The position numbers and the translations under genes are program-made. Source: Macrostomum lignano (taxonomy: Eukaryota). Taken from it: 64,000 nucleotides of DNA. Below the pieces are notes generated by a model that was given only the letters and a program-made list of their open reading frames with translations, was not told the origin of the DNA and did no database searches. Below are positions 1 to 63,156 of this stretch, in pieces; positions within the stretch are counted from its first letter, which is position 1, and each line of letters begins with the position of its first letter. The DNA lies in contig NIVC01000709.1 in NCBI GenBank assembly GCA_002269645.1, positions 124,001 through 188,000 of the forward strand, read 5' to 3'.

Positions 1-780
1 ATTTAACACAAACTTACTCAATTTTTCAAACGTCTATCCTAACTATTCACAAGTTTTTGTTTGAGATTACTTCAAATATAAGGATGCTTGCAAAAATAGT
101 TAACCGGGTATTGGAATTCAGCGGGTTCAAAATCCGCGCGGGCATTGACAGCTTGTATAACAAAAGTCTGTTTGTTCTTTATAGCTTTTTCTGTAAAATT
201 TATACAAAACTTTATTTGAAAGGACTACGTAGATTTACTGATTCTGCCTTACATCTGAATTATTATGCTACATTTTTGACATTAATTTAAAAAGTATTGC
301 ATGCTTATTAGCTAAATACTTCGTGTATTGATCTAGTTACAACTGACAAAAAATTATTGCATAGAGTTCAGCCCTACACTGTATAGATTGAGTAGTTTTT
401 GTTTTAGTCTGTATTTTACCACTAGATTGCAACACACAACCAATTGTTTTTAGCATGTATTATTAGTACATGTACTAGTGCGCAATCGGAATGAAAGTCC
501 TCTAAATACAATTTAAGTCATTCTATCAATCTAAAGCGCACCCAAAAACTGTTTCTAATTTTGTGTTTGGGAATTTTCCCAGCTGAGCCAGCTCAGCAAT
601 ATGCAGCCAGAATTTTTCCGTTGGTATGACAACGGGGGTAGCGCTTCCTGCCTCTTTGGAGGTGACGCATAAAAATTGTAAGGAGCCCATACCCATGTTG
701 CAATTATATGTTGCTTGACAAGAATTTTTCTGGTATAGTAAACCAACTGCATGCAGATATGTATTTTCTGCATGTAATTT

Positions 781-3058
781 CTAGTCGCTACACACAATGA
801 AGGTCACTACAGCGAGAAGTTCCACTCGTGTAGTGCAGTAATTCCGCTCAGCCGTTGACAACGTACGAGACCCGTAGGCGATGACCTTCTCTGATCCGTC
901 TAGCTGCAGTTGAGAGAGGACGCCTCCAATTCCCACTGACGAACTGCCATCCGTATCTAGTACGAACGACGGAGCATCTGGAGCAAAGTTTGGATATGCC
1001 ATAACTTGGTCGCTTGTCAACGCTTCCTTCATCTGCCGAAACGCCTTGTCTTGAGCAGGGCCCCACTGAAAGCGCGACACAGACCTTGTCAGCTCCGATA
1101 ACTGCTCTGATTTGCGCGAAAAATCCGAAATGAATCGTCGGCAATAACCAACAGTTCCGAGAAACGCTTGAACATCCTTAACGGTACTTGGTGTCTGCCA
1201 CTCATGAATCGCTCGGATTTTACTAGGATCGGTTGCCACGCCGGCCGCCGATACTACATGTATATGGCCCAAAAAACTCAATTCCGCACTGAGCAGCTCA
1301 CATTTTTGGGTTCGGCTTCAACTTAGCCTCCAGCTAAGCCGTCGAAATATCTCGTCAACCTTTCAATGTGCTCTTCCACGGTTTTCTAATATACTAGGAA
1401 ATCATCTAAATACACTAGACAAGTCTTCCACGATAGCGGATGCAGTACCGTCTGCATAATGCGGCTGAACGTAGCAGGCCCATTAGTCACCCGAACGGCA
1501 TCACCAACCATCGGAACTAGCCACTACAAAGGGAACTACGCTCGTACAAAGGCTGTCTTGTCGCGGTCCTCCAGCGCCACTGGCACCTGATGGTAACCTG
1601 ACCGCAAATCTCGGCAACGAAAGAGCATCTTTAACAGTCACTTTGTTGAATCGGCGATAATTCATGCACAACCGTAACGAATTGTCCTTCTTTCTGACGC
1701 ACACAATCGGCGAGCTCCATGGAGACATAGCTTCCTCGATCTTCCCTTGCGTTGGTAGCTAATCCAATTGTTCGTCGACTTCGGCTCGGAGGTGCGGTGG
1801 CACCTTGGTGCATGATTGATCTTGTAGTCCATGTTTCTTTCCATTGTTCACTCATTCGTCACCGTGGTTACTGCCAGATCCGTCGCGAAAACATCGCAGT
1901 TCCGCTGCATCAGCTCTTTGAACTGAGTCACCTGTTCGGTCGACAATCCGCAGTTTCTCCAACTTCTCAGGCTCTTCAGTAGATCGTCTGAGAGCTCACT
2001 CTCGTCCTTTGGCTTCTCCTCCATCATTGCAAGCGTCACTGGCTGCAGTGGATCTAAGGGGTGGTACCACCCTACAGTATCACCTTGGTTGCTGGTGACT
2101 GGCTAGTCTGAGAAGTTTGCCAACCGAATCAGAACTCTGACGCTTTCCGACGGCATCACCAGTGACCCAGCTAGCACCACCGTACCGCTCGCTTCTCCTT
2201 CGGACTTTCCTCGAGCACTCCTGGACTTCTTATTAGCTGACCTCTTCCGCCCTTTACCCGGAAACGCCCTGCTGCCAGCTTCTCGAACCCCGGCGGAACA
2301 ACGATTCGCTCCGATGCCAGGACCCTACGCACTGTAGCTGACCGCCGATGAAAACGCAGAAGGACTGACACCCAGGATATGCAGAACATTTTCTTGAAAA
2401 TCTACTTGACACCCCTGCTGCAGGAGAAAATCGGCTCCCATAAGTAACTCGTAGGAGACGAGGGGGCCGTAGCCCAGCTGCTATGGTGTGCCAGCGACCG
2501 AGGCTCGATTCCAAGTGCAGTCACATTAATTTGGGGCTGAATTGGAATCTCGGCTTGGCTCTGCTCGTGCAATTAACGGCCTTGAGAGCCAACCCCCCAA
2601 GGCGCAGTGAAGTGTACATGCCTAACGATAATATAAAGTTAGGGCCGCTCGCTGTACACTCCTGTGTGAGTGTGTGCCTGCGTACGCATCCGCGCGCTTG
2701 TGTGCCTGCTCAGGGGAGTCGGCGGAATGGGCAGTAATGCCTCTCGCCGGTGTGTGCCTATGTCGCTTAAAGTGCGCCAGGGTGCACACAACCCCCCTGC
2801 CTCTAATAAAAAAACTCGTAGGAGACTTACGGCGACACTAGGGGATACTTGCTTCAATTTTACTAAGGATGCTGGGGAGCTTGCAGATTGCGGTGATCAA
2901 TTTATTGGGCTACCGTTGGCGGCGTTGATGGTTGATTCGTGGTGTTTCGATATGGCTGTAGAGTCAGACATACTACTGGTCACTTGATGGAGCAATGCTT
3001 CACTAATTACTGTCACAGCTGCACCCGAATCTACACACGCAGAAACTATACTCGTCCT
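781..3058 (-). mobile_element. Decayed Gypsy/Ty3 pol fragment (protease-RT-RNase H), copy 1
   Basis: Minus-strand protease ACVDSGAAVTVIS and LLMGADFL; RT SPWSSPIVCVRKKD, DLRSGYHQV, CLVYLDD; RNase H FVLDTDGS..GIGGVLSQ..AERNYCTT. Many stops and frameshifts, no integrase. Identity to copy 2 ends at 3058. Confidence 0.93.
2460..2812 (+). mobile_element. tRNA-derived SINE inserted in the Gypsy protease (copy 1)
   Basis: A-box-like TAGCCCAGCTG, B-box-like GGCTCGATTCC, tail TAATAAAAAAA; 14-bp TSD AACTCGTAGGAGAC at 2446-2459 and 2813-2826. Confidence 0.85.
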
Positions 3059-3062
3059 TGTC

Positions 3063-3717
3063 GAGACTATACTTGTCCTTGTGGAGCTTGTCGAGACAGA
3101 TCTCGAACGGACGACAATGCGTAACAGAAGCCTGACTCCCATGCTACAGCTGTGCCTGACACTCTTATCTCGGCACTGGAGGCTTTCAGCAGAACCTGTC
3201 TGCTCTTGGAGGTATCGACCAAAGCACCATGTCCCGCTGCTACTGGGGAGTGGTCAGGATACTGAATCTCTGCTTGAATAACATCCGCTATCCAGAGCCA
3301 GGTGTTGAGCGGACGCGAGTGTCAACGGGGTTTAATCAAATTGGTCAACTGGCAGATGTATCGGTGCTATCGACTGTACGCATGTAAGAATTCAAAGGCC
3401 ATTTAGTGAGAACTTTCCAGATGAATTCATTAATCGTAAAAACTACCACTCTATTAACGTCCAAGCAGTCTGCGATGCGAGATACTTCTTTCTCGAAATA
3501 ACTGCTCAATGGCCTGGTTCAGTCCATGACTCGAGAATATTTCGCAACAGTTTTCTTTTCAGATCGCTTCTAGACGCCCAATGGGAGGGCTATCTTGTCG
3601 GAGATTCTGGATACCGACTGCGATTTTCTACTCACTCCATATCAAAACTCAGATGGCCGGCAGAGAATATTCAATCGCGAACTCAGCCGAGCGAGAGTTC
3701 GAATCGAGCAGACATTC
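3063..3717 (+). pseudogene. PIF/Harbinger (HARBI1-like) DDE transposase, frameshifted and truncated
   Basis: Manual translation across three frameshifts: ETILVLVELVETDLERTTMRNRSLTPMLQLCLTL / YLGTGGFQQ..GIDQSTMSR / CIGAIDCTHVRI..FINRKNYHSINVQAVCDA..WPGSVHDSRIF..GYLVGDSGY / FLLTPY..FNRELSRARVRIEQTF. Confidence 0.92.
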
Positions 3718-4594
3718 GCAGACACTCCTAATAACACGCTGCACTCCTAAAAATCACTCTTAAACGGCAACTCCCTAGCTCCTACTCCTATTCCCGCTCC
3801 TTATTCTATAGCATGCGACAAACCTTAATGAGATCTCCTAAATTCACCAAGGAGTTTCCTACGTCCTTAGGAGCCTAGGAGCCTCTTAAAATTTACTTTT
3901 GATTCTACGAGTATAGCACAGAAAAGCCATCTAGGAGCTCGGATTTAAGATTTAGGACACTCTATCTAAAGGATTTAATGAGGACGCACTTTTTTCCAAA
4001 TCCCGCGCTAGCACATGGGCTCTAAACTTTTACTTGCCTACTAACAGTGGGCAATGGGCATTCTTATCCCTTTTCTGCGAATTGTCATAGAATCTATACT
4101 AGATATAATGTTTGGTCATACTAGTAGTCATAATAACATAGGCGCAGCTTTTTGGGCATAAATCATCGCTTTCGAAGCTGGTCTTACAGCCACCTGCGCC
4201 TCACTCAGTGTTGAGGCGGGCGCCAGATGGTCTGAGGGGATGCGAATGATAGCTTTTTTCTCATCATTTTTGACAGGCCATCAGATTTATGAGGTCAGAG
4301 CCTATTGTTCGTGTTCACTCAAGCGTGTGACAGCTTTGACAGCTATGCGTTTTACCCCTAAAAGTACTTTGGGATTAGCGATTAGCGATTTCTCTTCATT
4401 ATCTTCACCTTCTACTTGATAAGAGCTTTCTAATGTATATTTTTTCATTAATTTTTGTCATTCCTACGCGGAAAGTCATAAATCATTTTGTAGCGATTTT
4501 GATTGATTTATGGCCGCACCTGTCATGTTTTTACGACCCCGAGGGAGCTGATATGATCTCCCGCTCACGTGATTCTGGGTAGCAACAAGCTTAG

Positions 4595-4696
4595 CCAATC
4601 AGAAAATTCGGCGCTCATTTTAACAAATCGGCTCAGCCAATCAGAATCGACGTGTTCCATTATAACAAACTGCGGTCCAGTTGGCGGCTATTTAAA
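4595..4696 (+). promoter_or_regulatory. Pol II promoter-like module (two CCAAT boxes and TATTTAAA)
   Basis: AGCCAATCAG twice (CCAAT at 4595 and 4637), then TATTTAAA at 4689-4696. No downstream ORF recognised; possibly part of a TE terminal repeat. Confidence 0.35.
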
Positions 4697-6569
4697 CCGG
4701 TGTTTTTGGCCCGCTCGGACTGCAACTTTTCTAGCGTCGGGCTGACACGGCTGCACCGGCCAGGAATTGACCGTCGTTTCTTGATCCCCGGATTGCGACT
4801 TCCCCCTATCATCATCAAGGACGAATCCCACCGGTCATCAGCAGTGAACATCAAAGTGAAGAGCATCACCTGCTAGCTATCAGCGAAGATTGTGACATCA
4901 GCATCATCCCGGGCCTTCAGCTGCGAAGCACTAAGCCGATTCGGTCGCTGTGGATTACCTGGTCTCCGGCTGTTGAGTTTCTGATTGGTTGGGTGAGAGG
5001 CTACCTAGACTTGCTTGATTGGGTGATTCCCTGTCTGTCCCCTGTTTCAGTAGCTGGAACTTCAGTAGCTAGTGAGAATCACTAGATGGCACACTTTTGC
5101 TCATTTTGTTCAGTAGTGTTGTTGCTGAGGCAGAAATCACTTAATAATACTGCTAGTAGTCTAAAACTCCAATTCAATCTGAAGTGTGAAGTGATCTAAG
5201 GAGAAGGTTAAATCTAACAGTTATTTTTGTCGGTTTTATTTCTTTGTTCGCCGATGGCTCAGATGAGTAGCTAAGCTAGTAGGCGCCGGTCACAGTGGAC
5301 CAATGGCAAGGCAGTTCTCAGTCGACCAATCTATCAAATCAGTGAGCAAAACTGCCAGAAGTGCAGAATCGGCGCCAGAGATGTACTTTGTGCACTCTAG
5401 GGTGGCCAAGCGGCTCGGGTAAATGAATCATGCGGTCTCTGAAGTTCGAGTTAGTCTATCATCAGCGCTATGAGAGGCTAGTTGGCGCGTTGAAGGCCAA
5501 AAGTACATATCTTCGTATTTAGCAATGTAATAGTACATGTAGCTACCCCATGGACTCGCCACCGCAAGAATCCCCTGCACAAGTCCCCTCTGTACCTGCA
5601 TGGCCAATGCGATCTAGTCCCAGCAGTGTCCCTTATCATCGGCTATGACTTCAAGATTGACAGCAAAAAGACACTAGTTGGCAGGTAAGTGCAAAGCCCC
5701 TTCTAGTCGGAAGCCCGATTTCGAGGGTCCCGGTGTGGTGAGCCAGGACGTACGGGCTGGTGGCAGCGAGTTAGCTAACCTGCTGGTTAACTAATTTCTA
5801 CCTTAAAAATTCTCCCTGCTTGTCTCTCGCTGTCCCTCTCTTAGCTATAGGACCTAGACTGCTCGCCACACGATCAAGCTACCATGGGGCTGACCATCTG
5901 ACAGGAGTGGGGGGCCAGGACTCTAATTGATTTATTTCTGAGACCTGAGGCCCGAAGGCTTCCCCACAAGGGGGCCGGAAGGTCGAAACCCATCAGATTT
6001 AGGAGTTAAGAGTATTTTATAGCACAGGCCCCTGCACCCCCGTGGAGAGGCTACGTTTAGCCATGACAGTTTCGTGAGAAATTCCAACCCCTGTCCTCTG
6101 TATAGGCAACGCTGTGGCAGTTTAACAGTGAATGGCAAATCAAGGCAATGCAGCATGGTTAATAAAACTAAAAGTGAAGTTTATGAAAAAGCGATCATTA
6201 CAATACAATCCAACTAAATTAGTTACACCATGGAAATTTCAACACTAAGTTTCACTTATAAAGGTACTTCCTCCAAAGAAATGCGTGTTTCCTTGGTTGG
6301 TAGACTGCTGCAGACTGCAGTGGATCTGGAGATACACAAATTCCTCCCAGGGAATTTCCTCCCAGACAATTAGGAAAGTGTTGGGTGTGGCCATAGACGA
6401 CTCAGTCGCACACACACCCAGCCATAAGCTAAAGAAGCAATGCTTCAAGCTTGGAACTAATAAAAGAAAAGTTTAGATAACATGAAATAAGACGCTATGC
6501 TGAGAGTGCAACTTTTAAGTTGACCTTGTTGATCTTGACTCACTGTCTTCCGCTAGAGAAGAAGTCATA

Positions 6570-7169
6570 ACAGAAAGAAAGGAGAGGCGAGAGGGGGATA
6601 AGAGAAAAGATAGAAGATAAGAAAGAGGAGAGACGAGGGGGTGAGGAGAGAGAAGGCGGAGAAAAGGGGAGGGAGAAGTGAGAGGAGAAGGGAGAGAAGT
6701 GGAGAGAGGAGGGAGAGAGAGTAAAGAGGAGAGAAGAGGGGGTAAAATGGGATAGAAAAGGGGAGAGATAAGAGATAGAAAGAAGAGAGAAGAGAGAAAA
6801 GATGAAAGAGCAGAGAGGGAAGAGGAGAGAGTAATAGTGATAAGAGAGTGGCGATGAGCGAGCAGAGGAGAGAGAGGAGAGATGATGAGACAGGGGGGAA
6901 GAGAGAGGAGAGAGGAGAGGAGTCAGAAGAGGGGAAAGAGAAGAGTACAGAGGAGAGAGGTGAGAGAAAAGATGAGAGAGTAAAGATGACAGAGAGAGAA
7001 CAGAGGGGAGAGAGAAGAGATTACAGAGACAAGAGGAGAGAGGAGAGAGAAAAGAGAGGGGAGAAGAGAGAAGAGAGAAGAGAAGAGAGAGAAGACGAGA
7101 TGATAGATGAGATTAAAAAGAAAGGAAAGAGGAAAGAGAAGAGAGGAGTGAAGTTTCAAAGAATCCGAG

Positions 7170-7256
<87 letters not shown>

Positions 7257-7260
7257 GAGA
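6570..7260. repeat. AG-rich low-complexity tract ending in pure (GA)n
   Basis: Degenerate purine tract about 6570-7149; pure (GA)n about 7172-7252. Confidence 0.95.
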
Positions 7261-7321
7261 GAGAGAGAAGAGAGGTCACGGCGTGTTTAAAAAAATCAAA
7301 AGACTTAATTAATTTAATATG

Positions 7322-7359
7322 GGCTACCGGTTTCGAGCCTCTGGGCTCTTCGTCAGGCC
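7322..7359 (-). ncRNA. Minimal type I hammerhead ribozyme
   Basis: Minus strand reads GGC CUGACGA A GAGCC-CAGA-GGCUC GAAA C CG GUA GCC. Stem I GGC/GCC, core CUGANGA and GAAA, perfect 5-bp stem II with tetraloop, palindromic stem III ACCGGU, GUA cleavage triplet. Confidence 0.88.
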
Positions 7360-10300
7360 AAAAAATCTGTGTCATGCAGTTCAAGTTGGTCTTTTAAGTT
7401 TTATTTTTCTTAGTCTGATAGAATTGATGAGTAGTTGTACATACCGTATGAGGGATGTACATTTAAAACCCTGTTTTGCCTAGCTCTAACTTGTCCCAGG
7501 GGCAAAGTCAAAACGAGGGCATCGCGAGTTTACACCATTCAAACTTTGTAATACCAAATTGTATCTGTTTTCTAATGAGTATGGCCGGTTAAATCTTGCA
7601 TTAAACTGTGAATTATAAATAATTTTACTATAATCTAAGTAAAATTAGTCTTTTTCGCTCCTCTAAAAGACAAAATATGTCCTTTTCAGCGATAATTTTT
7701 TTGGCGGAAATTCAACCACGTTGAACACGTGTGAAAAAAATTCTATATAATTTACAAATAAGGGCTAAAAATGTATGAATTAATGTAGTTGGTGAAAGTT
7801 TTAAGTTAATTTGCATTAAATGCATGCATGAGTAATGCTTTATTTGTATAAACCTTACTGTAGTTCGAATATTCTTCGTTTTGGTAGTAAACATTGATTA
7901 TGACATCCCACCTATATGCTCATATGAGAATATGTTAAAAACTAATCTAAATTGATGTATCCAATTGGATTATTCACTTTTACATTTTAGAAAATAATTT
8001 AGCATAAAATCGATGCTTTTTATTGAAAAAGCCTAATATATTACTTATTGTATAACCATTCTATAACAATATAAAAATACTTTTTAATAGTTAGAGAGCA
8101 CAAAGTGATTTTCTCCAGTAGTCTGTTGCATCAAAATGAATAATTGCCAGCTTTTAGAATTGAAATATGTTATTACACACCTATCAAGCTTGAAGCATTT
8201 TTTTTCTTTACTAAATGGTACTCTTTGTTGGCTCTTAAATGCCATAAATGTTAGTTTTTGTCATGATTTTTTTCTCCGGAAGCCCACTGTGTGGAGCATG
8301 TACAATGAAAAGCTTAGATATTTCCTCAAGGCACTGCAAAGAACCCTATAAAGAAGCATTTTTTTGGCTTTGCAGCAGGGACAACCTAATATAATTTTAT
8401 TGCCATTTAATGTATATTTTGTAATGAATTAGGCTTTATTTATTTTTAATGATAGTTATTCTGCTTATTTCATACTGAATAATTTGAGGTAAATTTTGTA
8501 AAAATTACTTTAAACATCTTTTTATTGACCATCACTTAAAATTTTTTATGACTAGCAATTCTAGTCTAAGATCACCAGATTAATCAGATTTCACTTACTA
8601 ACACCAAATAATCAGGTCTGATTGACTTTAAATTTACTTTAAATTCATTGGTCTGCTTAACTGACATCAGATTTACCTAGGATCAATAATTTTGGGGCAT
8701 CATGAAGGTTATAGCATTGTAACAGACTATGTAATCATGCTTAAATAACTTGGAACTCATAATTTAATATCTTGAAATCTGCATGGTGCTAGAATCCTAT
8801 TGGAATAGAAAGAAGACAGCAAAAAATACAGACAAAGTGTTCACTCATTATCTCTCTAATAATAAAATGTTCATCTCCACAGATGTACCTTTCAGCTGTT
8901 TGGAAACGGAATGAAAATAAAAATCGCTACAAATCGCTACACGCAGCAACAACTTGTGTCAACATAATTGACAACCATTGTAGAGAACCCCACCTCTTAT
9001 GTTCGGCGGGTAGTCGATCAGAATCCAGTCTGGCGCATCGCTGCAAGTTGGACTCTGTCACTCAGCTTTGTTCGACACAAGCAGATTTTGAGCACAGTCT
9101 GGCAGTATGCTGCACTTCAGTTTCAGCAGGGCCAATCTGAGCTGCTCGAGCAGAGTTTGAGAACACGCGCAGTATGTGCTTCCTTATTTTCACTTTTACG
9201 TTGCAATTTGGCCTCTTTTGTATCGACTTTTCTGCGTTCGCTCTGGCATGAGAGTACGAGCCCTCTTCAGCGTGGTAGCGTTGTAATGTTCTAGCTTTGA
9301 AAGCTAGGATGCTTTTATTTTTACTATAGCATACTCCTTATATAACTAATAAGTGCTTTTTAAGCTCAACCAGCTATGTACCTGTGATGTGTGGCTGCCA
9401 GCAGCCACGTATTAGTTTATGGGTATATGCTTGGCTTACAGACCCACAATTGATAGACTGCAGGAACAAGCGCGAAACGATTGACGAGCTCTTGCTTAAT
9501 TTCAACAAATATACGAGTAAACGAGCCTACGATTTAAAACACGACTTCCCAAACACATTGATCGGATAATAAAAAGTTTTATTAATAAAGCAGCATCAGC
9601 TCAAATATTTTAATCTATGGCCATGGACGTATAGAGCAGTCTGCACAGACCAGAACAGAAAATCAATATGGCTACCTCAAGAAGGGTAAAAAAGATATCT
9701 GGGTGGGGGCATGGTTATGATCCTATCCAAACAGTTTCAATACAAATGTGAATCTCACAGAGCTCTAAATGAAGCTCTTAATGCCTCTTGATTTAGTGAA
9801 AAAGATGAACAGGCAACAGAAATAGGTTTTAGAATTTTTAGGCACAAGTAATAAATTCCTGAAGCAGAAGTTTTATTAACTTAAATGCAAAACAAGATTT
9901 TTGGTATAGCCACTAGGCCCATACAATAAAACACACTATAAAACATAAGGTTCTAAAAAGGTGTGTCTTGTGGTCTGAGAGAAAATGTAGGCCACATAGC
10001 CACCAGAATCTTGGGTGCCAGAATCCAAAAGTAGCAGCGCAGCACCTGAACCAGTTGTGGGCAGAAGTGGCCTGCTAGGTGCAGGAGTCGCCAACATTGC
10101 AACAGGTTGCTCAGACAGATCAGGTTGGTTCATGGAGAAAGCACTAGACTCACTCAACCAAATGTAAAGGTAACATATAGCAAGTCCACCAGTTTCATTG
10201 TTTAAGTAAGGCCTCAGGTTTAGAGCTCAGAATGAAAGGCATATCATAAAATGCAGCTGAGAAGATCTCCCAAAGAAGTCCTGGCATGGCATGAATTAAA

Positions 10301-12029
10301 GTGAAAAACATTTAACATATTTTACTTACATTTAAGTCTAAAAAACTTCTACTAAAGCAAGTTAAGAATTTATTGGTATATTAAATATACAATAGTATAA
10401 AAGGAAACACTCCTGCTAGGCATTTAAAGCCAGTTTGTAAACAATAAAATATATAATAAAATATTGCTATTTTCTAATTTTTTAAAAAGCAAATATATCA
10501 GGTTTTGCATTTTTAACTTTTAACATGTTCTAAGTTCTTAAAGCTCATAATGTGAGTTTTAAATGAAATAAATGTAACAAATAATGCAAATGAAAACATA
10601 TTGCAATTATACATTTTAAAGAATAGTGCAAGTCACATTTTATATAGCTTTTTACATTGCAAATTATATGAAACTATAAAGTTAAAGTTTAAAAAAAGTT
10701 ATTACCTGTTTTACTTGCTACTTGTTAATTATTTAGCAATTTAAATTATATATATACTTAAAAGTGCATAGTGATGGCTATAATAAACAGTATCATTATC
10801 AGTAATCATAAGGTAGATTATCACTTAGCTAAGGCCTAATGGCTTTTGTAAAAAAGCATATATCAGTTTCGAAGTAATTCTAAGCTGTAAAGCTGTACAA
10901 AAATTTATATTTACATTATATTTTTTATTACTACGTCATTAGCAAAAAATAAAATAGGCCTAAGACACGGACAGTTAAATATAAATAGCAATCTGAACTA
11001 GACTACAAATTATGCCTCAGAACAAAAATATAGTTAAACAAGAGCGTGGGTGGATAAAGCTAGTTTATAAAAAAACTTGATAGACACCTTTATTTGTCAT
11101 TCTATTCAGTAAAATTATTTAAACCTCAGTCTCATGAGTCATTTGCCTATTCATAAGCCGTGGCTTATAAAATAAAGCATATATCTAGAATCCTCGATCG
11201 ATTATTGTTCATGAATTAGATAGATAAGCAGAAAATTGATGCTAGACGTTTGCAATGCTTGAAATACAGAAGTCAGTAATCAATATCTAAATCTCATATT
11301 TAATTCAATCCAAAAAAGTTTGCTGATATTTCACATCCGTAAAAAGAACCAGGCCAAACATCAATAATAAATAAAGTACTTATTAACATGAAACTGATAA
11401 CTAAATTAACGAGAGTATTTCAGAACACAAACAGGCGCGACGTAAACAAAGTAAGCAGTTTAACAAAATCCAGCCTAATATTTATTTAAAAAATATCTAT
11501 TGCAATATTTACCTAATTTTTTTCAGATAAAAACTACTTTTACGGGTTTGTATAAAACATTTATTTTTATAATACTTTATTTAGTTTCTGATTCTGCGTC
11601 CGTACAGTTCCGTAAAAGTAAAGATTAACAAATGGGTAGGAAATTTATTAAGAGGTGTATTTTGTGCTTTAAAAATGTTTTTTTGAGACCACTTAACGGA
11701 AATATAAAAAATTGTATAAAAAATTACCAATTGAAACAACAATTTTTTTTCTACATTTTCTGACTCCCCAGTTTTGACTTTAACCGCCCAGAGGCCTTCC
11801 ACCATTAATTTTAAACGACAGTATATTTGTTATAAAAAAATTGTTATTTCGAAGTACTATACGATATGCGATACTATACGATTAGATGAAATGCCGGTAT
11901 TGGGGGTAGGAGCATAAAAATCAATATTGAGCGTACAATTAAGCAGTTTGAATAAAATAAAATAAAATAAATGACACGTGAATAAATATTGTACTTCAAT
12001 AGGGTAAAATAGCGCATTGGTTAAAATGA

Positions 12030-13187
12030 TTAAATGTTTCCTGGCTGAGACTTGAACTTATTGGGAGCCAGGAGGCTCTGTAAGTTACGTTGCCGTGTAA
12101 AAGCGGGCAGAATGCGGGAGCCTGGTTTATTTTGTAGCTTCTCAAAGTTTTTAGCAATCTCGTTGGCAAGCCAGACCGTAGATGGGTGAAAAGGAAGGAC
12201 CATTGGGATGGGTCGGAGAAGATGATTGTCAACCCTGATGTTCGTGCCTGGCGGTTTGTCAGTCCCTAGTTTTTTAATCCAGATTTCTTCCCTTAGTTCG
12301 ATTTTGTTGTTATTAGGAACATGTTCGATAGCAATGGAGACAAAGTTTGCAATCGAGTGACTGGGGGTGAGAAAGTGCTCAGACCCCGAAGTCACGACCC
12401 TCCTGTTAATATTTGACCTGTGCTGGTTCATTCTATCTCTCATTGTTCTTCTAGTCATACCTACATAGAGGATTTTCCCAGGGTGGCACTGGTTGCAGGA
12501 GATGCCATATATGATGTTCATGGAGCCACAGGACAGGCTCTGAGAGATTAAAAAACCAGAAGCCGGTTTCAGTCCCTGGGCGGAGAGAGCAGGCGGTGAG
12601 TGGGTGCAGCATTTGCAGCGGGATGACCCACAGGGATGGAACCCTTTGGGAAGCAGACCCAGATTGGTCGTTGGTCCTGCAGTCCAGTTCATAAGTATGA
12701 GGACATCCTTTTTGCAGTTTCTAAGAAAAATCTTCGAGTAGCCTAATTGCTTGAGTTCCGATTTTAAAGAATTGAAAGCATCGTTGAAAGACTTGTAGTC
12801 ATCACAGATACGAGCGTACCGAAGGATTTGGGATTTTACTACCCCCTTGAAGGTGTGTGACGGATGGAAGGACTGTCGGTGCAACAATCTATGAGTGTCT
12901 GTTTCTTTTGAAAACAGTTGTGTTGTGAAGCGGTTTTCAGCTTTCCTGATGGTCATGTCAAGGAAACTGACCTCAGTTGATGAGGAGCTGACGGTGAGTT
13001 TGATGTTGGGGTTGATTGAATTTAGGTGTACAACAAATTCTGTCAGAGTTTCAGCCGGGTGGTCCCAGTGAATGAAGATATCATCTATGTACCTAAAATA
13101 GATGTTCGGCTTATAAAGAGCAGTTCTCAGGGCAGTTTCCTCCCAGAGGCTCATGAAGAGACAGGCATAGCTGGGCGCAACTTTCAA
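12030..13187 (-). mobile_element. Penelope-like element: 5'-truncated RT plus GIY-YIG endonuclease, open 385 codons
   Basis: RT motifs APSYACLFM, YFRYIDDIF, VSFLD, thumb SFHP..KSQILRYARIC; Cys motif CGSSRCKCC; GIY-YIG IYGISC..C..YVGMT..R..QH..E..WI..GTN. Starts inside RT motif 4. A (TTTTA)n tract near 11950-11972 may be its 3' end. Confidence 0.95.
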
Positions 13188-13213
13188 AGTTTCGAAGTTT
13201 CAAAGAATCCGAG

Positions 13214-13420
<207 letters not shown>

Positions 13421-13532
13421 AGATAGAGAAGCCAAAGTTTGTCAACACTTGCTTTAGACATGTTTAAAAAGACTTAATCTGTGTGGCACCCCAGTTGACG
13501 AGATCAATGCTTGCCTTAGCTCGTAAATCTTA

Positions 13533-16500
13533 ATTTAACACAAACTTACTCAATTTTTCAAACGTCTATCCTAACTATTCACAAGTTTTTGTTTGAGATT
13601 ACTTCAAATATAAGGATGCTTGCAAAAATAGTTAACCGGGTATTGGAATTCAGCGGGTTCAAAATCCGCGCGGGCATTGACAGCTTGTATAACAAAAGTC
13701 TGTTTGTTCTTTATAGCTTTTTCTGTAAAATTTATACAAAACTTTATTTGAAAGGACTACGTAGATTTACTGATTCTGCCTTACATCTGAATTATTATGC
13801 TACATTTTTGACATTAATTTAAAAAGTATTGCATGCTTATTAGCTAAATACTTCGTGTATTGATCTAGTTACAACTGACAAAAAATTATTGCATAGAGTT
13901 CAGCCCTACACTGTATAGATTGAGTAGTTTTTGTTTTAGTCTGTATTTTACCACTAGATTGCAACACACAACCAATTGTTTTTAGCATGTATTATTAGTA
14001 CATGTACTAGTGCGCAATCGGAATGAAAGTCCTCTAAATACAATTTAAGTCATTCTATCAATCTAAAGCGCACCCAAAAACTGTTTCTAATTTTGTGTTT
14101 GGGAATTTTCCCAGCTGAGCCAGCTCAGCAATATGCAGCCAGAATTTTTCCGTTGGTATGACAACGGGGGTAGCGCTTCCTGCCTCTTTGGAGGTGACGC
14201 ATAAAAATTGTAAGGAGCCCATACCCATGTTGCAATTATATGTTGCTTGACAAGAATTTTTCTGGTATAGTAAACCAACTGCATGCAGATATGTATTTTC
14301 TGCATGTAATTTCTAGTCGCTACACACAATGAAGGTCACTACAGCGAGAAGTTCCACTCGTGTAGTGCAGTAATTCCGCTCAGCCGTTGACAACGTACGA
14401 GACCCGTAGGCGATGACCTTCTCTGATCCGTCTAGCTGCAGTTGAGAGAGGACGCCTCCAATTCCCACTGACGAACTGCCATCCGTATCTAGTACGAACG
14501 ACGGAGCATCTGGAGCAAAGTTTGGATATGCCATAACTTGGTCGCTTGTCAACGCTTCCTTCATCTGCCGAAACGCCTTGTCTTGAGCAGGGCCCCACTG
14601 AAAGCGCGACACAGACCTTGTCAGCTCCGATAACTGCTCTGATTTGCGCGAAAAATCCGAAATGAATCGTCGGCAATAACCAACAGTTCCGAGAAACGCT
14701 TGAACATCCTTAACGGTACTTGGTGTCTGCCACTCATGAATCGCTCGGATTTTACTAGGATCGGTTGCCACGCCGGCCGCCGATACTACATGTATATGGC
14801 CCAAAAAACTCAATTCCGCACTGAGCAGCTCACATTTTTGGGTTCGGCTTCAACTTAGCCTCCAGCTAAGCCGTCGAAATATCTCGTCAACCTTTCAATG
14901 TGCTCTTCCACGGTTTTCTAATATACTAGGAAATCATCTAAATACACTAGACAAGTCTTCCACGATAGCGGATGCAGTACCGTCTGCATAATGCGGCTGA
15001 ACGTAGCAGGCCCATTAGTCACCCGAACGGCATCACCAACCATCGGAACTAGCCACTACAAAGGGAACTACGCTCGTACAAAGGCTGTCTTGTCGCGGTC
15101 CTCCAGCGCCACTGGCACCTGATGGTAACCTGACCGCAAATCTCGGCAACGAAAGAGCATCTTTAACAGTCACTTTGTTGAATCGGCGATAATTCATGCA
15201 CAACCGTAACGAATTGTCCTTCTTTCTGACGCACACAATCGGCGAGCTCCATGGAGACATAGCTTCCTCGATCTTCCCTTGCGTTGGTAGCTTAATCCAA
15301 TTGTTCGTCGACTTCGGCTCGGAGATGCGGTGGCACCTTGGTGCATGATTGATCTTGTAGTCCATGTTTCTTTCCATTGTTCACTCATTCGTCACCGTGG
15401 TTACTGCCAGATCCGTCGCGAAAACATCGCAGTTCCGCTGCATCAGCTCTTTGAACTGAGTCACCTGTTCGGTCGACAATCCGCAGTTTCTCCAACTTCT
15501 CAGGCTCTTCAGTAGATCGTCTGAGAGCTCACTCTCGTCCTTTGGTTTCTCCTCCATCATTGCAAGCGTCACTGGCTGCAGTGGATCTAAGGGGTGGTAC
15601 CACCCTACAGTATCACCTTGGTTGCTGGTGACTGGCTAGTCTGAGAAGTTTGCCAACCGAATCAGAACTCTGACGCTTTCCGACGGCATCACCAGTGACC
15701 TAGCTAGCACCACCGTACCCGCTCGCTTCTCCTTCGGACTTTCCTCGAGCACTCCTGGACTTCTTATTAGCTGACCTCTTCCGCCCTTTACCCGGAAACG
15801 CCCTGCTGCCAGCTTCTCGAACCCCGGCGGAACAACGATTCGCTCCGATGCCAGGACCCTACGCACTGTAGCTGACCGCCGATGAAAACGCAGAAGGACT
15901 GACACCCAGGATATGCAGAACATTTTCTTGAAAATCTACTTGACACCCCTGCTGCAGGAGAAAATCGGCTCCCATAAGTAACTCGTAGGAGACGAGGGGG
16001 GCCGTAGCCCAGCTGCTCTGGTGTGCCAGCGACCGAGGCTCGATTCCAAGTGCAGTCACATTAATTTGGGGCTGAATTGGAATCTCGGCTTGGCTCTGCT
16101 CGTGCAATTAACGGCCTTGAGAGCCAACCCCCCAAGGCGCAGTGAAGTGTACATGCCTAACGATAATATAAAGTTAGGGCCGCTCGCTGTACACTCCTGT
16201 GTGAGTGTGTGCCTGCGTACGCATCCGCGCGCTTGTGTGCCTGCTCAGGGGAGTCGGCGGAATGGGCAGTAATGCCTCTCGCCGGTGTGTGCCTATGTCG
16301 CTTAAAGTGCGCCAGGGTGCACACAACCCCCCTGCCTCTAATAAAAAAACTCGTAGGAGACTTACGGCGACACTAGGGGATACTTGCTTCAATTTTACTA
16401 AGGATGCTGGGGAGCTTGCAGATTGCGGTGATCAATTTATTGGGCTACCGTTGGCGGCGTTGATGGTTGATTCGTGGTGTTTCGATATGGCTGTAGAGTC

Positions 16501-16593
16501 AGACATACTACTGGTCACTTGATGGAGCAATGCTTCACTAATTACTGTCACAGCTGCACCCGAATCTACACACGCAGAAACTATACTCGTCCT
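13533..16593 (+). repeat. Segmental duplicate of 1-3058
   Basis: Same ORFs at offset 13532 (57..290 = 13589..13822). About 7 SNP or 1-bp indel differences noticed. Confidence 0.97.
15994..16347 (+). mobile_element. tRNA-derived SINE in the Gypsy protease (copy 2)
   Basis: Same as 2460-2812; TSD AACTCGTAGGAGAC at 15980-15993 and 16348-16361. Confidence 0.85.
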
Positions 16594-17962: not shown

Positions 17963-17974
17963 GTCACGGCACCA
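17963..17974 (-). promoter_or_regulatory. Primer binding site, tRNA-His
   Basis: TGGTGCCGTGAC one base after the LTR-terminal CA; complementary to the eukaryotic tRNA-His 3' end (GUCACGGCACCA). Confidence 0.85.
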
Positions 17975-17975
17975 A

Positions 17976-18702
17976 TGTTGTGTCCCGAGACGGACCAGCA
18001 GGCCTTAACTCACGCTCAGTACGAGCAGGGAGGGCTAGCACTTCAGTCCCACTGTTTACCAACCCCCAGTCGCGCTGCACGCACAGATTGAAGGCCAGTA
18101 CCAGGGTCGCGGCGAACGCACAAGACCTGGTAACAGATGCCTAATCTGGACCCCAAAGAACGCACACAAAGACTCGTACACTTACGCGACCGCTGCCGAA
18201 TTTGAGACGCCTCGCTGCTGTCGCTCTAATCAACGATTCACTTTTATAGCCGTAAGTCTATGTCTACTGTGACTGTCTACTCTTGTTTATTTCAGTTGTT
18301 ATTTAGGGGCAGTGGTATTTTAGCACTCGGCCCAAAATAGCTAAAATTGTAAAATTGTAAGCGGCGAGGCGACAGGGCGCGCGACCCTTATACAGTGAAT
18401 ATGAAAGTACGAGTAGTAGAGTAGCGACCCTAAGCCGACAGATAGTCAGAAAGAGAAAGAGAGAGAGAGCGGAGTGCAACCCAATGCCTGGCCAGAACGC
18501 CACAGCAGAGCCAATCAGCACGCGGGGAGGGGTAGAAAACTGACGCAAGAGGGCGCACGAGGAAGAGGGGGGCTTAGGCGCAGACGAGTGTAGGGACGAA
18601 ATGAGTCAATCAGCAAGCAATAGGTGAATTAAACATGAGTGCGAAGGGACGAAAAAAGTAGCAAAACGAGTGCACGTACGCCGTGCACCCGAAATCACCA
18701 CA
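17976..18702 (-). mobile_element. 5' LTR (727 bp) of the Gypsy element
   Basis: Begins TGTGGTG and ends CACAACA (6/7 inverted match) directly before the PBS; internal TATAAAAG and AATAAA. The upstream boundary is inferred from the terminal motif, since no second LTR is available. Confidence 0.75.
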
Positions 18703-32200: not shown

Positions 32201-34290
32201 CATCTTATCTTCCCTCTCGTCTCTCTCCACTCTACTCTCTCATCTTATCTCTCCTCTCTTTTCTACTCTCTCATCTCTCCTCTCTTCACTCTCCTCTCAT
32301 CTCCTCTTTATCCTCTCTTCTCTCATCTACTCTCTCCTCTTTCCTCTCTTCTGATCTCATCCATCATCTTTTCTTTCCTCTTTCCTCTAATCTCCTCTTC
32401 TCTCTCATCTCTTTTTCCTCCCTCAGCTTTTCTCTCCTCTTCTATCTTTTCTCCCATCGCATCGCTCGCCTCTCCTCTGTTTGCTTATCTCTAATCTTCT
32501 ATTCCCTCTACTTTGAAGTAAGAAAATATGCACATATTTTTGCTGAAGATAAGAGGATAGAAGAGGGCATTGAGGAGAAAGGGTAGAGAGAAAGGGGGAG
32601 AAGAGAGGAGAGTAAAAATGAGAGGAGAGAGAAGAGGGAAAAGGGGGAGAGAGAGAAGAGGGGAGGCAAGGTAGAGAAGAAGAGAGAGATGAGAGTTGAA
32701 GAGACACCAACCTTGCTGGTTAGGAAGTTTCAAAGAATCCGAGGGGCGAGGGCCAGATAGAGGGGCTTCGCGAGCCGGAGTTTGCCAACCCCTGCTCCAG
32801 AGTTTAAGAAATCAATGGGAAACTGTTGACGCGGGCTTCTGATTTCAAAGATCTTGTCTGTGGTTGAAGGCTTCTATTCTGTTTTTGCTCTCCTACCACA
32901 CTTGCACCTACTACCCCCTGATTGCCTCTGATTGTGACTTATTTCCCTCTTATTGCGACTTAGTTGCTTCTTTTTGCGACTTACCTAATCCTTTTTGCAA
33001 CTTACCTAATCCTTTTTGCAACTTACCTAATCCTTTTTGCAACTTACTTAATCGTTTTTGCGACTTACTTAATCCTTTTTGCAACTTACCTAATCCTTTT
33101 GCGACTTACCTAATCCTTTTTGCGACTTACCTAATCCTTTTGCGACTTAGCTGATCCTTTTGCGACTTACCTGATTCTTTTTGCGACTTAGTTTGCTTCT
33201 TTTGCGACTTACCTGATTCCTGTTGCGACTTACCTGATCCTTTTTGCGACTTAGTTTGCTTCTTTTGCAACTTACCTGATCCTTTTTGCGACTTACCTGA
33301 TTATTTTTATAACTTAGTTTGCTTCTTTAGCGAATTGTTTTTCTTTTGCTTCACCATTTTCCCTGAACTGCTCTTTCTTTCGCTTTCCTCTTGCCTTTCT
33401 TGGTTCTTGTGTTTTTCTGTTTTTGGTTGACTCAATTTTGCGACTTACCCCTGGTCAGCCACGATTTACGGTGGCCAGATCGGCCAGGTCGGCCAGCAGT
33501 TGCGCATGTATGTTCTATCCAATAGCAACTTATATGTGTATGTCGCCAATGAAATGGCTGGGTGAATCCCTAGGTTACGCTCAAGTATGTTAGCTACCAT
33601 TGGCTTGTTAGAGAGCCCTATAGAAAATGCATTTTATATCAATGATTATAGCCATGCATATAAGCTCAAATATTATAGACATGGCTGCCATGCCTATAAG
33701 TTCTAATATTAAAGACATGACTACTATGTCTATAAGCTCTATACTTATAGACATGGCCACAATGCCTATAAGTATAAGTACTCCAAAAAGTTATTTGTTT
33801 ATAAAACTAAAGTAAAAGTAAATAAAAGATAAAAAATAAAAAGTTAAAGATAAAATTTTGTTGCATAATCTGTCAATTATATTTTTAGCTTAATTGCAAA
33901 ATTTATAATATTTTTCTATAATTTTTCCATCCTAGCCTAGCATTATCATAAAATTATAAAAATAGTCATTGGCAAAAATGCTTAGCAAAATTTAGCAAAC
34001 TAAAAGACACTTGCCAAAATTAATCAGTCAGTTGCCAGTCATTAGGCCTAGTTTTGATAACCAAACTATTGTGGGGAGTATTATATTAGTAATGATATTG
34101 AATATTGTCATTGACATCAGTATTAATATGATTAAAACAATATTATCTTAAATTTTAAAACATTCCTAATGTTTTTGCATTTGATTAGTATAATACAAAT
34201 ATTAAAACAAATTTAACCAACCTGATCCAAGCATTTTAGCTGTTCAATAGGATACACTACTTTATCACACCCAGCACACCTTTTGTCCAT
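26266..34290 (-). CDS. LASP1: LIM and SH3 domain protein (LASP/nebulette family), 6 exons, about 326 aa
   Basis: Exons 34290-34222 ([23 protein letters not shown]), 28656-28562 ([24 protein letters not shown]), 28466-28379, 28298-28194 and 27596-27147 (nebulin repeats plus Q/P/Y linker), 26439-26266 (SH3 [22 protein letters not shown]). All junctions GT-AG with consistent phases. Confidence 0.96.
26468..26860. repeat. 23-24-bp minisatellite in LASP intron 5
   Basis: Unit CTGACTCCACACCCCCAATTACAC, about 16 copies. Confidence 0.95.
27640..28137. repeat. 31-bp minisatellite in LASP intron 4
   Basis: Unit GGGACTTCCGGTGGGTGAGACTGACACTTGA, about 16 copies. Confidence 0.95.
28945..29080 (-). mobile_element. 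Degenerate tRNA-derived SINE fragment
   Basis: Minus-strand TGTGTCCTTGAACAA..CTTAACCCTGCATTGCTTCAGTCCCC resembles the core of the SINE at 59998-60268; decayed head. Confidence 0.5.
31507..33512. mobile_element. Non-autonomous hAT-type DNA transposon, 2006 bp
   Basis: Perfect 14-bp TIR CATACATGCGCAAC / GTTGCGCATGTATG; 8-bp TSD TTCTATCC at 31499-31506 and 33513-33520; subterminal GCGACTTA motifs; no transposase ORF seen. Confidence 0.92.
32950..33330. repeat. About 21-bp tandem array TTTTTGCGACTTACCTAATCC
   Basis: Read directly; lies inside the 31507-33512 element. Confidence 0.9.
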
Positions 34291-53095: not shown

Positions 53096-53126
53096 GATAA
53101 TGAGAATGCGATGGAATCAGAACCGG

Positions 53127-62256: not shown

Positions 62257-63156
<900 letters not shown>

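What the first reader, a model, noticed from the sequence alone, without database searches (positions are those of the whole stretch)
7150..7375. Hammerhead ribozyme inside a (GA)n-microsatellite module, co-oriented with a nearby Penelope-like element
Seen: a complete minimal type I hammerhead (7322-7359, minus strand) about 60 nt from a (GA)n tract that is anchored by the 27-mer GAAGTTTCAAAGAATCCGAGGGATAGA. It is on the same strand as the Penelope RT ORF 4.7 kb away. Established: Penelope pLTRs and animal retrozymes carry such minimal hammerheads, and palindromic stem III forms can cleave as dimers. Inference: a microsatellite-containing pLTR or non-autonomous retrozyme family, whose RNA would carry a long (UC)n tract 3' of the cut.
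Basis: partly seen in the sequence, partly recalled or inferred. Interest (0 to 1): 0.75.

Follow-up and report, generated by a model that had tools for sequence, protein, structure and literature searches.

The report
Penelope retrotransposon hammerhead ribozyme, flatworm
The hammerhead ribozyme motif is real, but it is the ordinary ribozyme at the 3' end of a dead, 5'-truncated Penelope-like retrotransposon copy in the flatworm Macrostomum lignano, and the adjoining (GA)n repeat was already at the insertion site.

Summary
Observation confirmed. Window 7359->7322 (minus strand) holds a complete minimal type-I hammerhead with every hallmark published for Penelope-like element (PLE) ribozymes: an intact core, an extra A between A9 and G10.1, a G10.1-C11.1 pair and a palindromic CCGG in place of helix III. 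A strict descriptor found none in 300 shuffles. Two related PLE contigs carry the same architecture with covarying helices. Rfam misses all three.

The window is Macrostomum lignano. A second contig of the same assembly (L004) is an empty site. It has one 27-mer+(GA)39 joined directly to the flank that lies right of copy B. The window carries an extra ~5.93 kb (7262-13193). On the minus strand this starts with the 5'-truncated PLE RT/GIY-YIG ORF and ends 63 nt after the ribozyme cut. So ribozyme and ORF are the two ends of one insertion.

The 27-mer+(GA)n is pre-existing target DNA, repeated (~112 bp) on both sides, not the RNA 3' of the cut. No tandem ribozymes were found, so it is not a retrozyme.

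One twist: the pre-existing flank matches the PLE 3' end minus a 56-nt ribozyme segment, which suggests homing into an older decayed PLE end.

Verdict: a new member of a known kind, of modest interest.

The parts
7322..7359 (-). Minimal type-I hammerhead. Helix I is GGC/GCC. The core is CUGACGA plus an extra A. Helix II is GAGCC/GGCUC with loop CAGA, followed by GAAA. A palindromic CCGG stands in place of helix III, followed by U16.1 and A17. The predicted cut is between 7325 and 7324.
   Evidence: The hallmarks are those listed in PMC4209133. The double-hammerhead fold is -30.1 kcal/mol, against -26.6 for two monomers.
7262..7321 (-). The 3'-terminal 60 nt of the inserted segment, downstream of the ribozyme. 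It ends in the TC run CCTCTCTTCTCTCT (7275->7262). The 3' junction with target DNA is at 7262/7261.
   Evidence: Comparison with empty site L004.
7360..12029 (-). A 4.67-kb AT-rich (22-43% GC) non-coding spacer between the ORF stop and the ribozyme. It is unique in all sequence held. It is either the element's own long pLTR/UTR or captured DNA.
   Evidence: There is a precedent for unique spacers before the 3' pLTR in PMC3846280.
12030..13187 (-). A 5'-truncated PLE ORF of 385 codons with no internal stop. It contains RT motifs 4-5 (YIDD), the CX4CX2C linker, the GIY-YIG endonuclease and a C-terminal extension.
   Evidence: PF01541, 6.9e-07. One search aligns it to residues 237-611 of L001 ORF2 at 44% identity. 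One search gives the relatives.
13185..13193 (-). The 5' junction. The filler CAAAGTTTC (plus strand) repeats part of the adjoining 27-mer, so TTTCAAAG and AAGTTTC each occur twice across the junction. This looks like a microhomology or template-switch junction.
   Evidence: Read directly from the sequence. This is an inference.
7150..7261 (+). Direct-repeat copy A: 27-mer + (GA)38 + GGTAGAGAG. It is pre-existing target DNA, contiguous with the left flank exactly as in the empty site.
13194..13429 (+). Direct-repeat copy B: 27-mer + (GA)22 CACACA (GA)71 GTA (GA)4 TAGAGA. This is the second copy of the target, and its microsatellite has expanded or been altered.
13430..13512 (+). Flank F (AGCCAAAGTTTGTCAAC...CTGTGTGGCACCCCAGTTGACGAG). 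It is present at the empty site. It is homologous to copy C and to the PLE 3' end minus the ribozyme segment. It may be an old PLE end.
32724..32850 (+). Copy C of the same repeat: the 22-mer plus F-like sequence in the same orientation. It has no (GA)n and no hammerhead. Only ATGGG..AAA remains where the ribozyme core would be.
6850..7149 (+). Imperfect GA-rich satellite-like flank. It is also present in L004, and similar tracts lie at 32090-32723.

Best explanation
The motif is the pLTR-type minimal hammerhead of an endonuclease-bearing Penelope-like retrotransposon of Macrostomum lignano.

Shown:
- On the minus strand, a ~5.93-kb segment (13193->7262) begins with a 5'-truncated RT/GIY-YIG ORF and ends 63 nt downstream of the ribozyme cut site.
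- This segment is absent from a paralogous contig of the same assembly.
- It is bracketed by a ~112-bp direct repeat of the target, 27-mer+(GA)n.

Inferred mechanism:
- The element's RNA was reverse-transcribed from an internal start just 3' of the hammerhead. This is known for the Anolis PLE PAc, where RT starts about 90 nt after the cut.
- Priming came from a nick in the (GA)n strand, which annealed to a short UC run in the RNA.
- Synthesis stopped early, giving the 5' truncation.
- The 5' end was joined at the far end of the 27-mer through microhomology, which duplicated the intervening target.

Role of the ribozyme:
- In a functional element the hammerhead would cut multi-unit PLE transcripts after GUA.
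- It would do so as a domain-swapped dimer through ACCGGU/ACCGGU, or with help from the PLE protein.
- Here it is a passenger in a dead copy.

The target itself (F-(TC)n-22-mer) probably derives from an older PLE 3' end that has lost its ribozyme. If so, the new copy homed into a relic of its own family. That last step is inferred with roughly even odds.
For: - Motif: the core and all four published min-HHR hallmarks are met. The strict descriptor gave 0 hits in 300 shuffles.
- Relatives: contigs L001 and L007 carry the same architecture on the ORF strand. Both have the extra A and G10.1-C11.1, with palindromes CGCG and AUGCAU, and helices I and II covary.
- Organism: a window ORF is 100% identical to M. 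lignano PAA78052.1.
- Empty site: L004 1-3597 matches window 3665-7253 and L004 3508-4247 matches window 13211-13937. Nothing in L004 matches 7254-13210, and L004-L006 contain no PLE ORF.
- Target origin of copy A: A has (GA)38+GGTAGAGAG and L004 has (GA)39+GGTAGAGAG.
- Boundaries: the edges of the indel coincide with a truncated PLE ORF on one side and hammerhead+63 nt on the other.
- Literature: internal RT initiation and a protein-assisted hammerhead (PMC11167929). A CX2-5CxxC linker linked to microsatellite targeting (PMC8557442). Unique spacers before the 3' pLTR and microhomology 5' junctions (PMC3846280).
- Simple repeats around relatives: the L001 contig starts and ends in (CAGT)n, and L007 in poly(T).
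- Older-relic idea: 18/18 identity between F and the PLE end once the 56-nt segment is removed, and homology between copies B and C.
Against: - A 112-bp target duplication is far longer than the 8-10 bp reported for PLEs.
- Copy B's microsatellite, (GA)22 CACACA (GA)71, differs strongly from A and L004. A young duplication must therefore have mutated fast on one side only.
- The 4.67-kb spacer has no demonstrated PLE origin.
- Only one comparator locus exists. Deletion in L004 by recombination between the two repeats, or misassembly inside (GA)n, cannot be formally excluded.
- Helix I has only 3 bp, and no cleavage or RNA data are available.
- Rfam gives no hit.
Confidence: 0.75

Rival explanations
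1. The 27-mer, the long (GA)n and the hammerhead form one mobile module: a microsatellite-containing pLTR or a non-autonomous retrozyme. Its RNA would carry a long (UC)n and the 22-mer 3' of the cut. On this view copy A's microsatellite arrived with the element, which landed exactly at the end of an older copy (B).
For: - F (B and L004) and copy C are homologous to the PLE 3' end around the ribozyme.
- The 22-mer is 22/22 identical in four copies although the neighbouring DNA is only about 70-75% identical.
- After the 22-mer the three window copies diverge at once, as at a retroelement 3' terminus.
- B's microsatellite differs from A's.
- PLE endonucleases are reported to recognise their own tail or pLTR junction.
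Against: - The empty site already has the 27-mer+(GA)39+GGTAGAGAG, without hammerhead or PLE.
- Copy A matches the empty site in repeat number (38 vs 39) and in the GGTAGAGAG interruption. That would be a coincidence if A came from a distant master copy.
- Copies B, L004 and C all lack the ribozyme.
- There is one hammerhead in the window and no tandem array, so the defining retrozyme layout is not met.
Confidence: 0.15
2. The window arrangement is ancestral, and L004 is a deletion product of unequal recombination between two pre-existing 27-mer+(GA)n repeats (a 'solo' remnant). Alternatively the window or L004 is misassembled within (GA)n. In either case the 'single insertion' inference fails.
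For: - L004 equals A-left plus B-right, which is exactly what crossing-over in (GA)n would give.
- Long microsatellites are assembly hazards.
- The region is full of recent duplications.
Against: - The repeat boundaries coincide precisely with a 5'-truncated PLE ORF and with hammerhead+63 nt. Recombination between unrelated repeats would not predict this. Even in this scenario the repeats are best explained as products of the PLE insertion.
- L004 carries two extra GTAGAGRG units not expected from a simple A x B recombinant.
Confidence: 0.07
3. A chance match to the hammerhead consensus with no ribozyme ancestry.
For: - The bare core pattern is expected about 1.2 times per window.
- Rfam gives no hit.
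- The monomer fold has a z-score of only -1.4.
Against: - The strict descriptor gave 0 hits in 300 shuffles.
- It sits at the 3' end of a PLE insertion, on the ORF strand.
- Two related PLE contigs have the same unusual features, with compensatory changes.
- All published min-HHR hallmarks are met.
Confidence: 0.03

Closest known systems
Minimal type-I hammerheads of metazoan Penelope-like elements (Cervera & de la Pena 2014, PMC4209133), for example in the Cercyon PLEs of the flatworm Schistosoma mansoni
   Same: - Intact CUGANGA / GAAA / UH core.
- An unpaired nucleotide between A9 and G10.1.
- A G10.1-C11.1 pair.
- No real helix III, but a palindrome (CCGG) allowing a dimeric ribozyme.
- A short helix I.
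- Found as a single dispersed copy attached to a truncated PLE, on the ORF strand.
   Different: - Helix II has 5 bp (7-8 in the main Schistosoma families) and helix I only 3 bp.
- The host species, Macrostomum lignano, was not found in the held literature in connection with hammerheads.
- No second pLTR copy of the ribozyme is present.
- Activity is untested.
PAc (Poseidon of Anolis carolinensis): internal initiation of reverse transcription and a protein-assisted hammerhead (PMC11167929)
   Same: The insertion's 3' end lies a few tens of nucleotides downstream of the hammerhead cut (63 nt here, about 90 nt in PAc). It is a 5'-truncated product, and the hammerhead is carried near the 3' end of copies.
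   Different: - PAc cuts at AT-rich ATT sites, whereas this junction lies in a (GA)n tract.
- The PLE clade differs: here a CX4CX2C linker, and relatives with a large ORF1.
- The target duplication here is about 112 bp.
- Nothing was tested biochemically.
Microsatellite-targeting PLEs (Neptune with the CX2-5CxxC linker; Naiad at (TA)n; Chlamys at (CA)n/(C)n; PMC8557442)
   Same: - The CX4CX2C Zn-finger-like linker lies upstream of GIY-YIG.
- The insertion junction is inside a microsatellite.
- The relatives' contigs are bounded by simple repeats.
   Different: The target here is (GA)n next to a conserved 22-mer. An empty site is available, so the duplication can be measured. Clade membership was not tested by phylogeny.
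Non-LTR (metazoan) retrozymes: tandem 170-400-nt repeats, each with a type-I hammerhead, expressed as circRNAs. A 2026 preprint (10.64898/2026.07.22.740005) proposes they derive from PLE pLTRs.
   Same: The same class of type-I hammerhead with a palindromic helix III, and the same evolutionary link to PLE ends.
   Different: No tandem array, one ribozyme only, and physical attachment to a PLE ORF. No circRNA data are available.

Membership tests
PLE minimal hammerhead (min-HHR, PMC4209133) | Conserved catalytic core C3U4G5A6N7G8A9 ... G12A13A14 A15.1 ... U16.1 H17 | tested here: met
   CUGACGA ... GAAA ... U A on the minus strand at 7359->7322.
PLE minimal hammerhead (min-HHR, PMC4209133) | [quoted passage not shown] | tested here: met
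   An A lies after CUGACGA. The same extra A occurs in L001 and L007.
PLE minimal hammerhead (min-HHR, PMC4209133) | G10.1-C11.1 closing pair of an extended helix II | tested here: met
   GAGCC/GGCUC, 5 bp with G-C first. G-C is invariant in all three loci, and positions 10.4 and 10.5 show compensatory changes.
PLE minimal hammerhead (min-HHR, PMC4209133) | Palindromic 15.2-16.2 region (no stable helix III), allowing a dimer | tested here: met
   CCGG between A15.1 and U16.1. The double-hammerhead structure is -30.1 kcal/mol, against a cofold MFE of -30.3 and -26.6 for two monomers.
PLE minimal hammerhead (min-HHR, PMC4209133) | Located in the pLTR/terminal region of a PLE, on the sense strand | tested here: met
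   It lies 63 nt from the 3' end of the inserted segment whose 5' end is the PLE ORF. However, no second, upstream pLTR copy of the ribozyme exists.
PLE minimal hammerhead (min-HHR, PMC4209133) | Genome-wide consensus families with covariation | not testable with these tools
   No search of the M. lignano genome was possible. Only three loci from three samples were compared.
PLE minimal hammerhead (min-HHR, PMC4209133) | Self-cleavage after H17 | not testable with these tools
   This needs transcription assays. Published min-HHRs cleave poorly in vitro.
Rfam hammerhead families (Hammerhead_1, _3, _II, HH9, HH10) | A covariance-model score at or near the gathering threshold | tested here: not met
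   No hammerhead hit even at E<=10 on 201 nt. The same holds for the L001 and L007 hammerheads, so the models do not cover helix-III-less variants.
Non-LTR retrozyme | A head-to-tail tandem array of short units, each with a hammerhead | tested here: not met
   One hammerhead in 64 kb plus 60 kb of paralogous DNA, and no tandem unit around it.
Non-LTR retrozyme | A circular RNA product | not testable with these tools
   No RNA data were available.
Endonuclease-positive Penelope-like element | [quoted passage not shown] | tested here: met
   GIY-YIG PF01541, 6.9e-07. The RT part aligns at 44% with L001 ORF2, which starts with the DKG motif region. Relatives carry RVT_1. The copy is 5'-truncated.
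Endonuclease-positive Penelope-like element | Direct pseudo-LTRs from a partial tandem insertion | tested here: not met
   The flanking direct repeat is target DNA that is present at the empty site. The sequence upstream of copy B is not a copy of the ribozyme-bearing end.
Neptune/Nematis-type PLE clade | A CX2-5CxxC linker upstream of GIY-YIG, and phylogenetic placement | tested here: inconclusive
   The CGSSRCKCC motif is present. No phylogeny was run.

The most novel reading that the evidence does not exclude
The ribozyme may be a separable cassette. The PLE 3' end equals the pre-existing flank F plus a precise 56-nt segment (U-run, hammerhead, AU-rich tail) bounded by ATT...ATT.

Two readings follow:
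- Hammerhead mini-copies (extremely 5'-truncated PLE ends of about 53 nt) insert on their own at ATT sites and can seed new PLE termini. On this reading hammerheads 'parasitise' PLEs.
- This PLE family homes, by (GA)n/(UC)n annealing and recognition of the invariant 22-mer, into relics of its own 3' ends, producing >100-bp target duplications.
Probability: 0.12. Interest if true: 0.6.

Novelty: new member of a known kind. Interest (0 to 1): 0.3.

Why it matters
It adds a free-living flatworm model species to the hosts of PLE minimal hammerheads. The motif class itself has been well described since 2014, so that part is ordinary.

The useful part is the natural before-and-after pair inside one assembly. 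It shows where a PLE copy ends relative to its ribozyme: 63 nt after the cut. This agrees with the internal initiation of reverse transcription shown biochemically for one lizard element. It also shows an insertion into a (GA)n tract by a PLE with the Zn-finger-like linker that has been proposed to target microsatellites.

The ~112-bp duplication and the resemblance of the target to a ribozyme-less PLE end are leads on PLE integration that a genome-wide census could settle quickly.

It also shows that Rfam-based annotation will miss this ribozyme class.

Tried and rejected
- Rfam at gathering score and at E<=10 found no hammerhead. I treat this as a limit of the models, because the motif meets the published descriptor.
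- The bare core pattern search is not significant on its own, so I replaced it with a structural descriptor tested against shuffles.
- Monomer MFE folding is uninformative, as expected for a dimeric ribozyme.
- The 21-mer scan of metagenome contigs gave one hit (L003). It is a bacterial terminator-like hairpin and a chance match. The viral contig scan found nothing.
- Exact look-up of the window's PLE ORF and of two host ORFs found nothing on record.
- My first model held that copies A, B and C are three 5'-truncated PLE ends all terminating in the 22-mer. I demoted it once L004 showed that the 27-mer+(GA)n pre-exists without PLE. It survives only as the 'older relic' component.
- MAFFT could not align the three hammerheads or copy A with B and C without manual help. 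For that reason I built no covariance model.
- GA-rich flanks resemble each other at several places. This similarity is too low-complexity to define element boundaries.
- ORF1 of L001 and ORF1 of L007 are not detectably homologous.
- The contig ends of L001 and L007 do not show a circular or tandem overlap, only simple repeats.
Full report

Yes. On the minus strand, 7359->7322 reads GGC CUGACGA A GAGCC CAGA GGCUC GAAA CCGG U A GCC. This is a type-I hammerhead with these features:
- the full catalytic core;
- a 5-bp helix II closed by G10.1-C11.1;
- an extra A between A9 and G10.1;
- no true helix III, but the palindrome CCGG between A15.1 and U16.1;
- a GUA cleavage triplet, with the cut between 7325 and 7324;
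- a 3-bp helix I.

The 27-mer is exact at 7150-7176 and at 13194-13220. (GA)38 follows it at the first site. The PLE ORF is at 13187->12030 on the same strand.

A bare core pattern is not significant, with 1.2 expected per window. A structural descriptor of my own found only this site. It is expected 0.08 times in loose form, and the strict form gave 0 hits in 300 dinucleotide shuffles.

Rfam finds no hammerhead even at E<=10. It also fails on the two homologous ribozymes described in section 2. The negative result therefore reflects the Rfam models, which expect a helix III.

**2. Is it a PLE hammerhead?**

Cervera & de la Pena (PMC4209133) list features that emerged for PLE minimal hammerheads beyond their search descriptor:
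- a conserved G10.1-C11.1 pair;
- a palindromic 15.2-16.2 region;
- covarying consensus families.

The first three are met here.

For the fourth I had no genome to search. Instead I used the relatives of the window's PLE protein, at 37-58% identity, which led to Logan contigs. L001 carries UUCGC CUGAAGA A GGGGAA CUUU UUCCUC GAAA CGCG U C GCGAA at 1706-1749. L007 carries GCGC CUGAUGA A GGGCA GUUG UGCCC GAAA AUGCAU U U GCGC at 907-948. Both are on the ORF strand, 260-370 nt upstream of a large ORF1 that is followed by the RT-EN ORF2.

The core, the extra A and G10.1-C11.1 are invariant across the three. Helix I and the inner pairs of helix II change in a compensatory way.

The domain-swapped double-hammerhead fold of the M. 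lignano sequence is -30.1 kcal/mol. This is essentially the cofold optimum (-30.3) and is better than two monomers (-26.6).

**3. What organism, and what is around the motif?**

A 495-aa window ORF is 100% identical to Macrostomum lignano PAA78052.1. Its paralogues gave three further loci of assembly GCA_002269645.1.

L004 is decisive:
- L004 1-3597 matches window 3665-7253 at 96.5%.
- L004 3508-4247 matches window 13211-13937.
- L004 5009-11741 matches window 14455-21201 at 99%.
- Nothing in L004 matches window 7254-13210, and L004-L006 contain no PLE ORF.

L004 has one 27-mer. It is followed by (GA)39 GGTAGAGAGGTAGAGGGGTA(GA)4TAGAGA and then AGCCAAAGTTTG..., which is flank F, the flank that in the window follows copy B.

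The window therefore holds an extra 5,932 bp (7262-13193). In sense (minus-strand) orientation this segment contains, in order:
- the 5'-truncated PLE ORF, equivalent to residues 237-611 of L001 ORF2, with 385 codons and no stop;
- 4.67 kb of AT-rich unique non-coding DNA;
- the hammerhead;
- 63 nt, ending in CCTCTCTTCTCTCT.

The segment is bracketed by a direct repeat of the 27-mer+(GA)n. Copy A, (GA)38 GGTAGAGAG, is practically the empty-site allele, (GA)39 GGTAGAGAG. Copy B is (GA)22 CACACA (GA)71.

**4. Interpretation**

The edges of the indel are a truncated PLE ORF on one side and hammerhead+63 nt on the other. Ribozyme and ORF are therefore the two ends of one PLE-derived insertion, not merely neighbours.

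The geometry fits what is known for PAc (PMC11167929). There, reverse transcription starts inside the RNA a few tens of nucleotides 3' of the hammerhead, so every copy carries the ribozyme near its 3' end, and 5' truncation is common.

The junction inside (GA)n, next to a UC run in the element, suggests priming by annealing. The CX4CX2C linker upstream of GIY-YIG is the motif that Arkhipova and colleagues associate with microsatellite targeting (PMC8557442). The contigs of the two relatives begin and end in simple repeats: (CAGT)n for L001 and poly(T) for L007.

The 5' junction carries a short filler that repeats part of the 27-mer. This resembles the microhomology junctions described for rotifer PLEs (PMC3846280). 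The same paper documents long unique spacers between the ORF and the 3' pLTR, a precedent for the 4.67-kb stretch.

**5. What the (GA)n/27-mer is**

It pre-exists at the empty site without ribozyme or PLE. A third copy (C, 32724-32850) has the 22-mer and F-like DNA but neither (GA)n nor a hammerhead. The long (GA)n next to this hammerhead is therefore target DNA, duplicated over about 112 bp. It is not the RNA 3' of the cut. The retrozyme layout of tandem ribozyme units is absent.

- If the 56-nt ribozyme-bearing segment (bounded by ATT...ATT) is removed from the PLE 3' end, the remainder reads ACACAGATTAAGTCTTTT. This is 18/18 identical to F. Copy C retains ATGGG..AAA at the place of the ribozyme core.
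- The 22-mer is identical in four copies, while the neighbouring DNA of B and C is only about 70-75% identical.
- A 112-bp duplication is far beyond the 8-10 bp usual for PLEs, and copy B's microsatellite differs strongly from A's.

The reading that fits all of this best is that F-(TC)n-22-mer is an old PLE 3' end of the same family that has lost its ribozyme, and that the new copy homed into it. I give that component about even odds. A genome-wide census would settle it.

**6. Rivals**

- An element-borne microsatellite module: 0.15.
- Deletion or misassembly instead of insertion: 0.07. Even then the repeat boundaries point to a PLE insertion as their origin.
- A chance motif: 0.03.

**7. Known or new?**

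PLE minimal hammerheads are well described, including thousands in the flatworm Schistosoma mansoni. I found no paper in the held library linking Macrostomum with hammerheads or describing its PLEs.

This is a new member of a known kind. The copy is dead, since it lacks the N-terminal RT half and any ORF1. Interest is modest, and rests mainly on the insertion/empty-site pair and the odd target duplication.

**8. Caveats**

- No cleavage or RNA evidence is available.
- There is only one comparator locus.
- Both junctions lie in or next to long microsatellites.
- Clade placement was not tested.
- Copy number in the genome is unknown, because no tool here searches eukaryotic genomes.

Noticed in passing
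L001:2120-5158 (Logan SRR19430222) and L007:1212-3836 (Logan SRR16902653): Relatives of this PLE have a large proline-rich ORF1 between the hammerhead and the RT-EN ORF2. In L001, ORF1 contains an AlkB-like 2OG-Fe(II) oxygenase domain (PF13532, 5.4e-31). No paper in the library links PLEs with AlkB. The two ORF1s are not detectably homologous to each other.
   Followed up: partly
L001:1-100 and 7440-7477; L007:1-27 and 7514-7536: The PLE-bearing contigs of the relatives begin and end in simple repeats: (CAGT)n for L001 and poly(T) for L007. This is compatible with simple-repeat targeting by this PLE clade, or with assembly breaks at repeats.
   Followed up: partly
window 7150-7171, 13194-13215, 32724-32745; L004:3599-3620: The 22-mer GAAGTTTCAAAGAATCCGAGGG is perfectly conserved in all four copies, although the adjoining homologous DNA is only about 70-75% identical. 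Its function is unknown. Candidates are an endonuclease recognition site, an RT start site or a 'tail'.
   Followed up: partly
window 1-3058 and 13533-16593: A 3.06-kb direct duplication at 99.8% identity, 13.5 kb apart. It carries a Ty3/gypsy RT-RNase H fragment (781-1281 and 14313-14813, minus strand). The left copy starts at the window edge, so its true extent is unknown. L004 has a single copy in this stretch.
   Followed up: partly
window 37494-38237 / 43505-44251 and 40080-40583 / 44561-45064: Recent tandem duplication (95.6-99.5% identity) of ammonium-transporter-like coding pieces about 6 kb apart. The MFS genes at 19456-20943 and 60378-61862 are also paralogous.
   Followed up: no
window 25500-28200, 32900-33350, 41730-42210, 46660-47480, 49160-50770, 51320-53100, 53720-54200, 62090-63170: An unusually dense set of minisatellites with periods of 8, 15, 21, 22, 31, 33, 48 and 52 nt. 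Several form long artefactual ORFs.
   Followed up: no
window 31916-32512 versus L004:3410-3998 / window 13533-13700: An inverted, diverged (about 69% identity) copy of the GA-rich tract plus the start of the duplicated 3-kb segment lies next to copy C. GA-rich satellite, 22-mer, F and the 3-kb segment therefore recur together in different arrangements.
   Followed up: partly
window 12030-12330 (C-terminus of the PLE ORF): About 70 residues follow the GIY-YIG domain (IPMVLPFHP...ILPAFTRQRNLQSLL). As I recall (not tested here), this motif normally precedes the Zn-finger/GIY-YIG region in many invertebrate PLE-like proteins. L001 ORF2 has the same C-terminal extension, so the order appears permuted in this clade.
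   Followed up: no
L003:7398-7432 (metagenome contig Ga0209310_1000031): The only public-collection hit to the 21-mer is a bacterial terminator-like hairpin (CCCTCGGATTC...GAATCCGAGGGG) after a stop codon. It is a chance match, unrelated to the flatworm repeat.
   Followed up: yes
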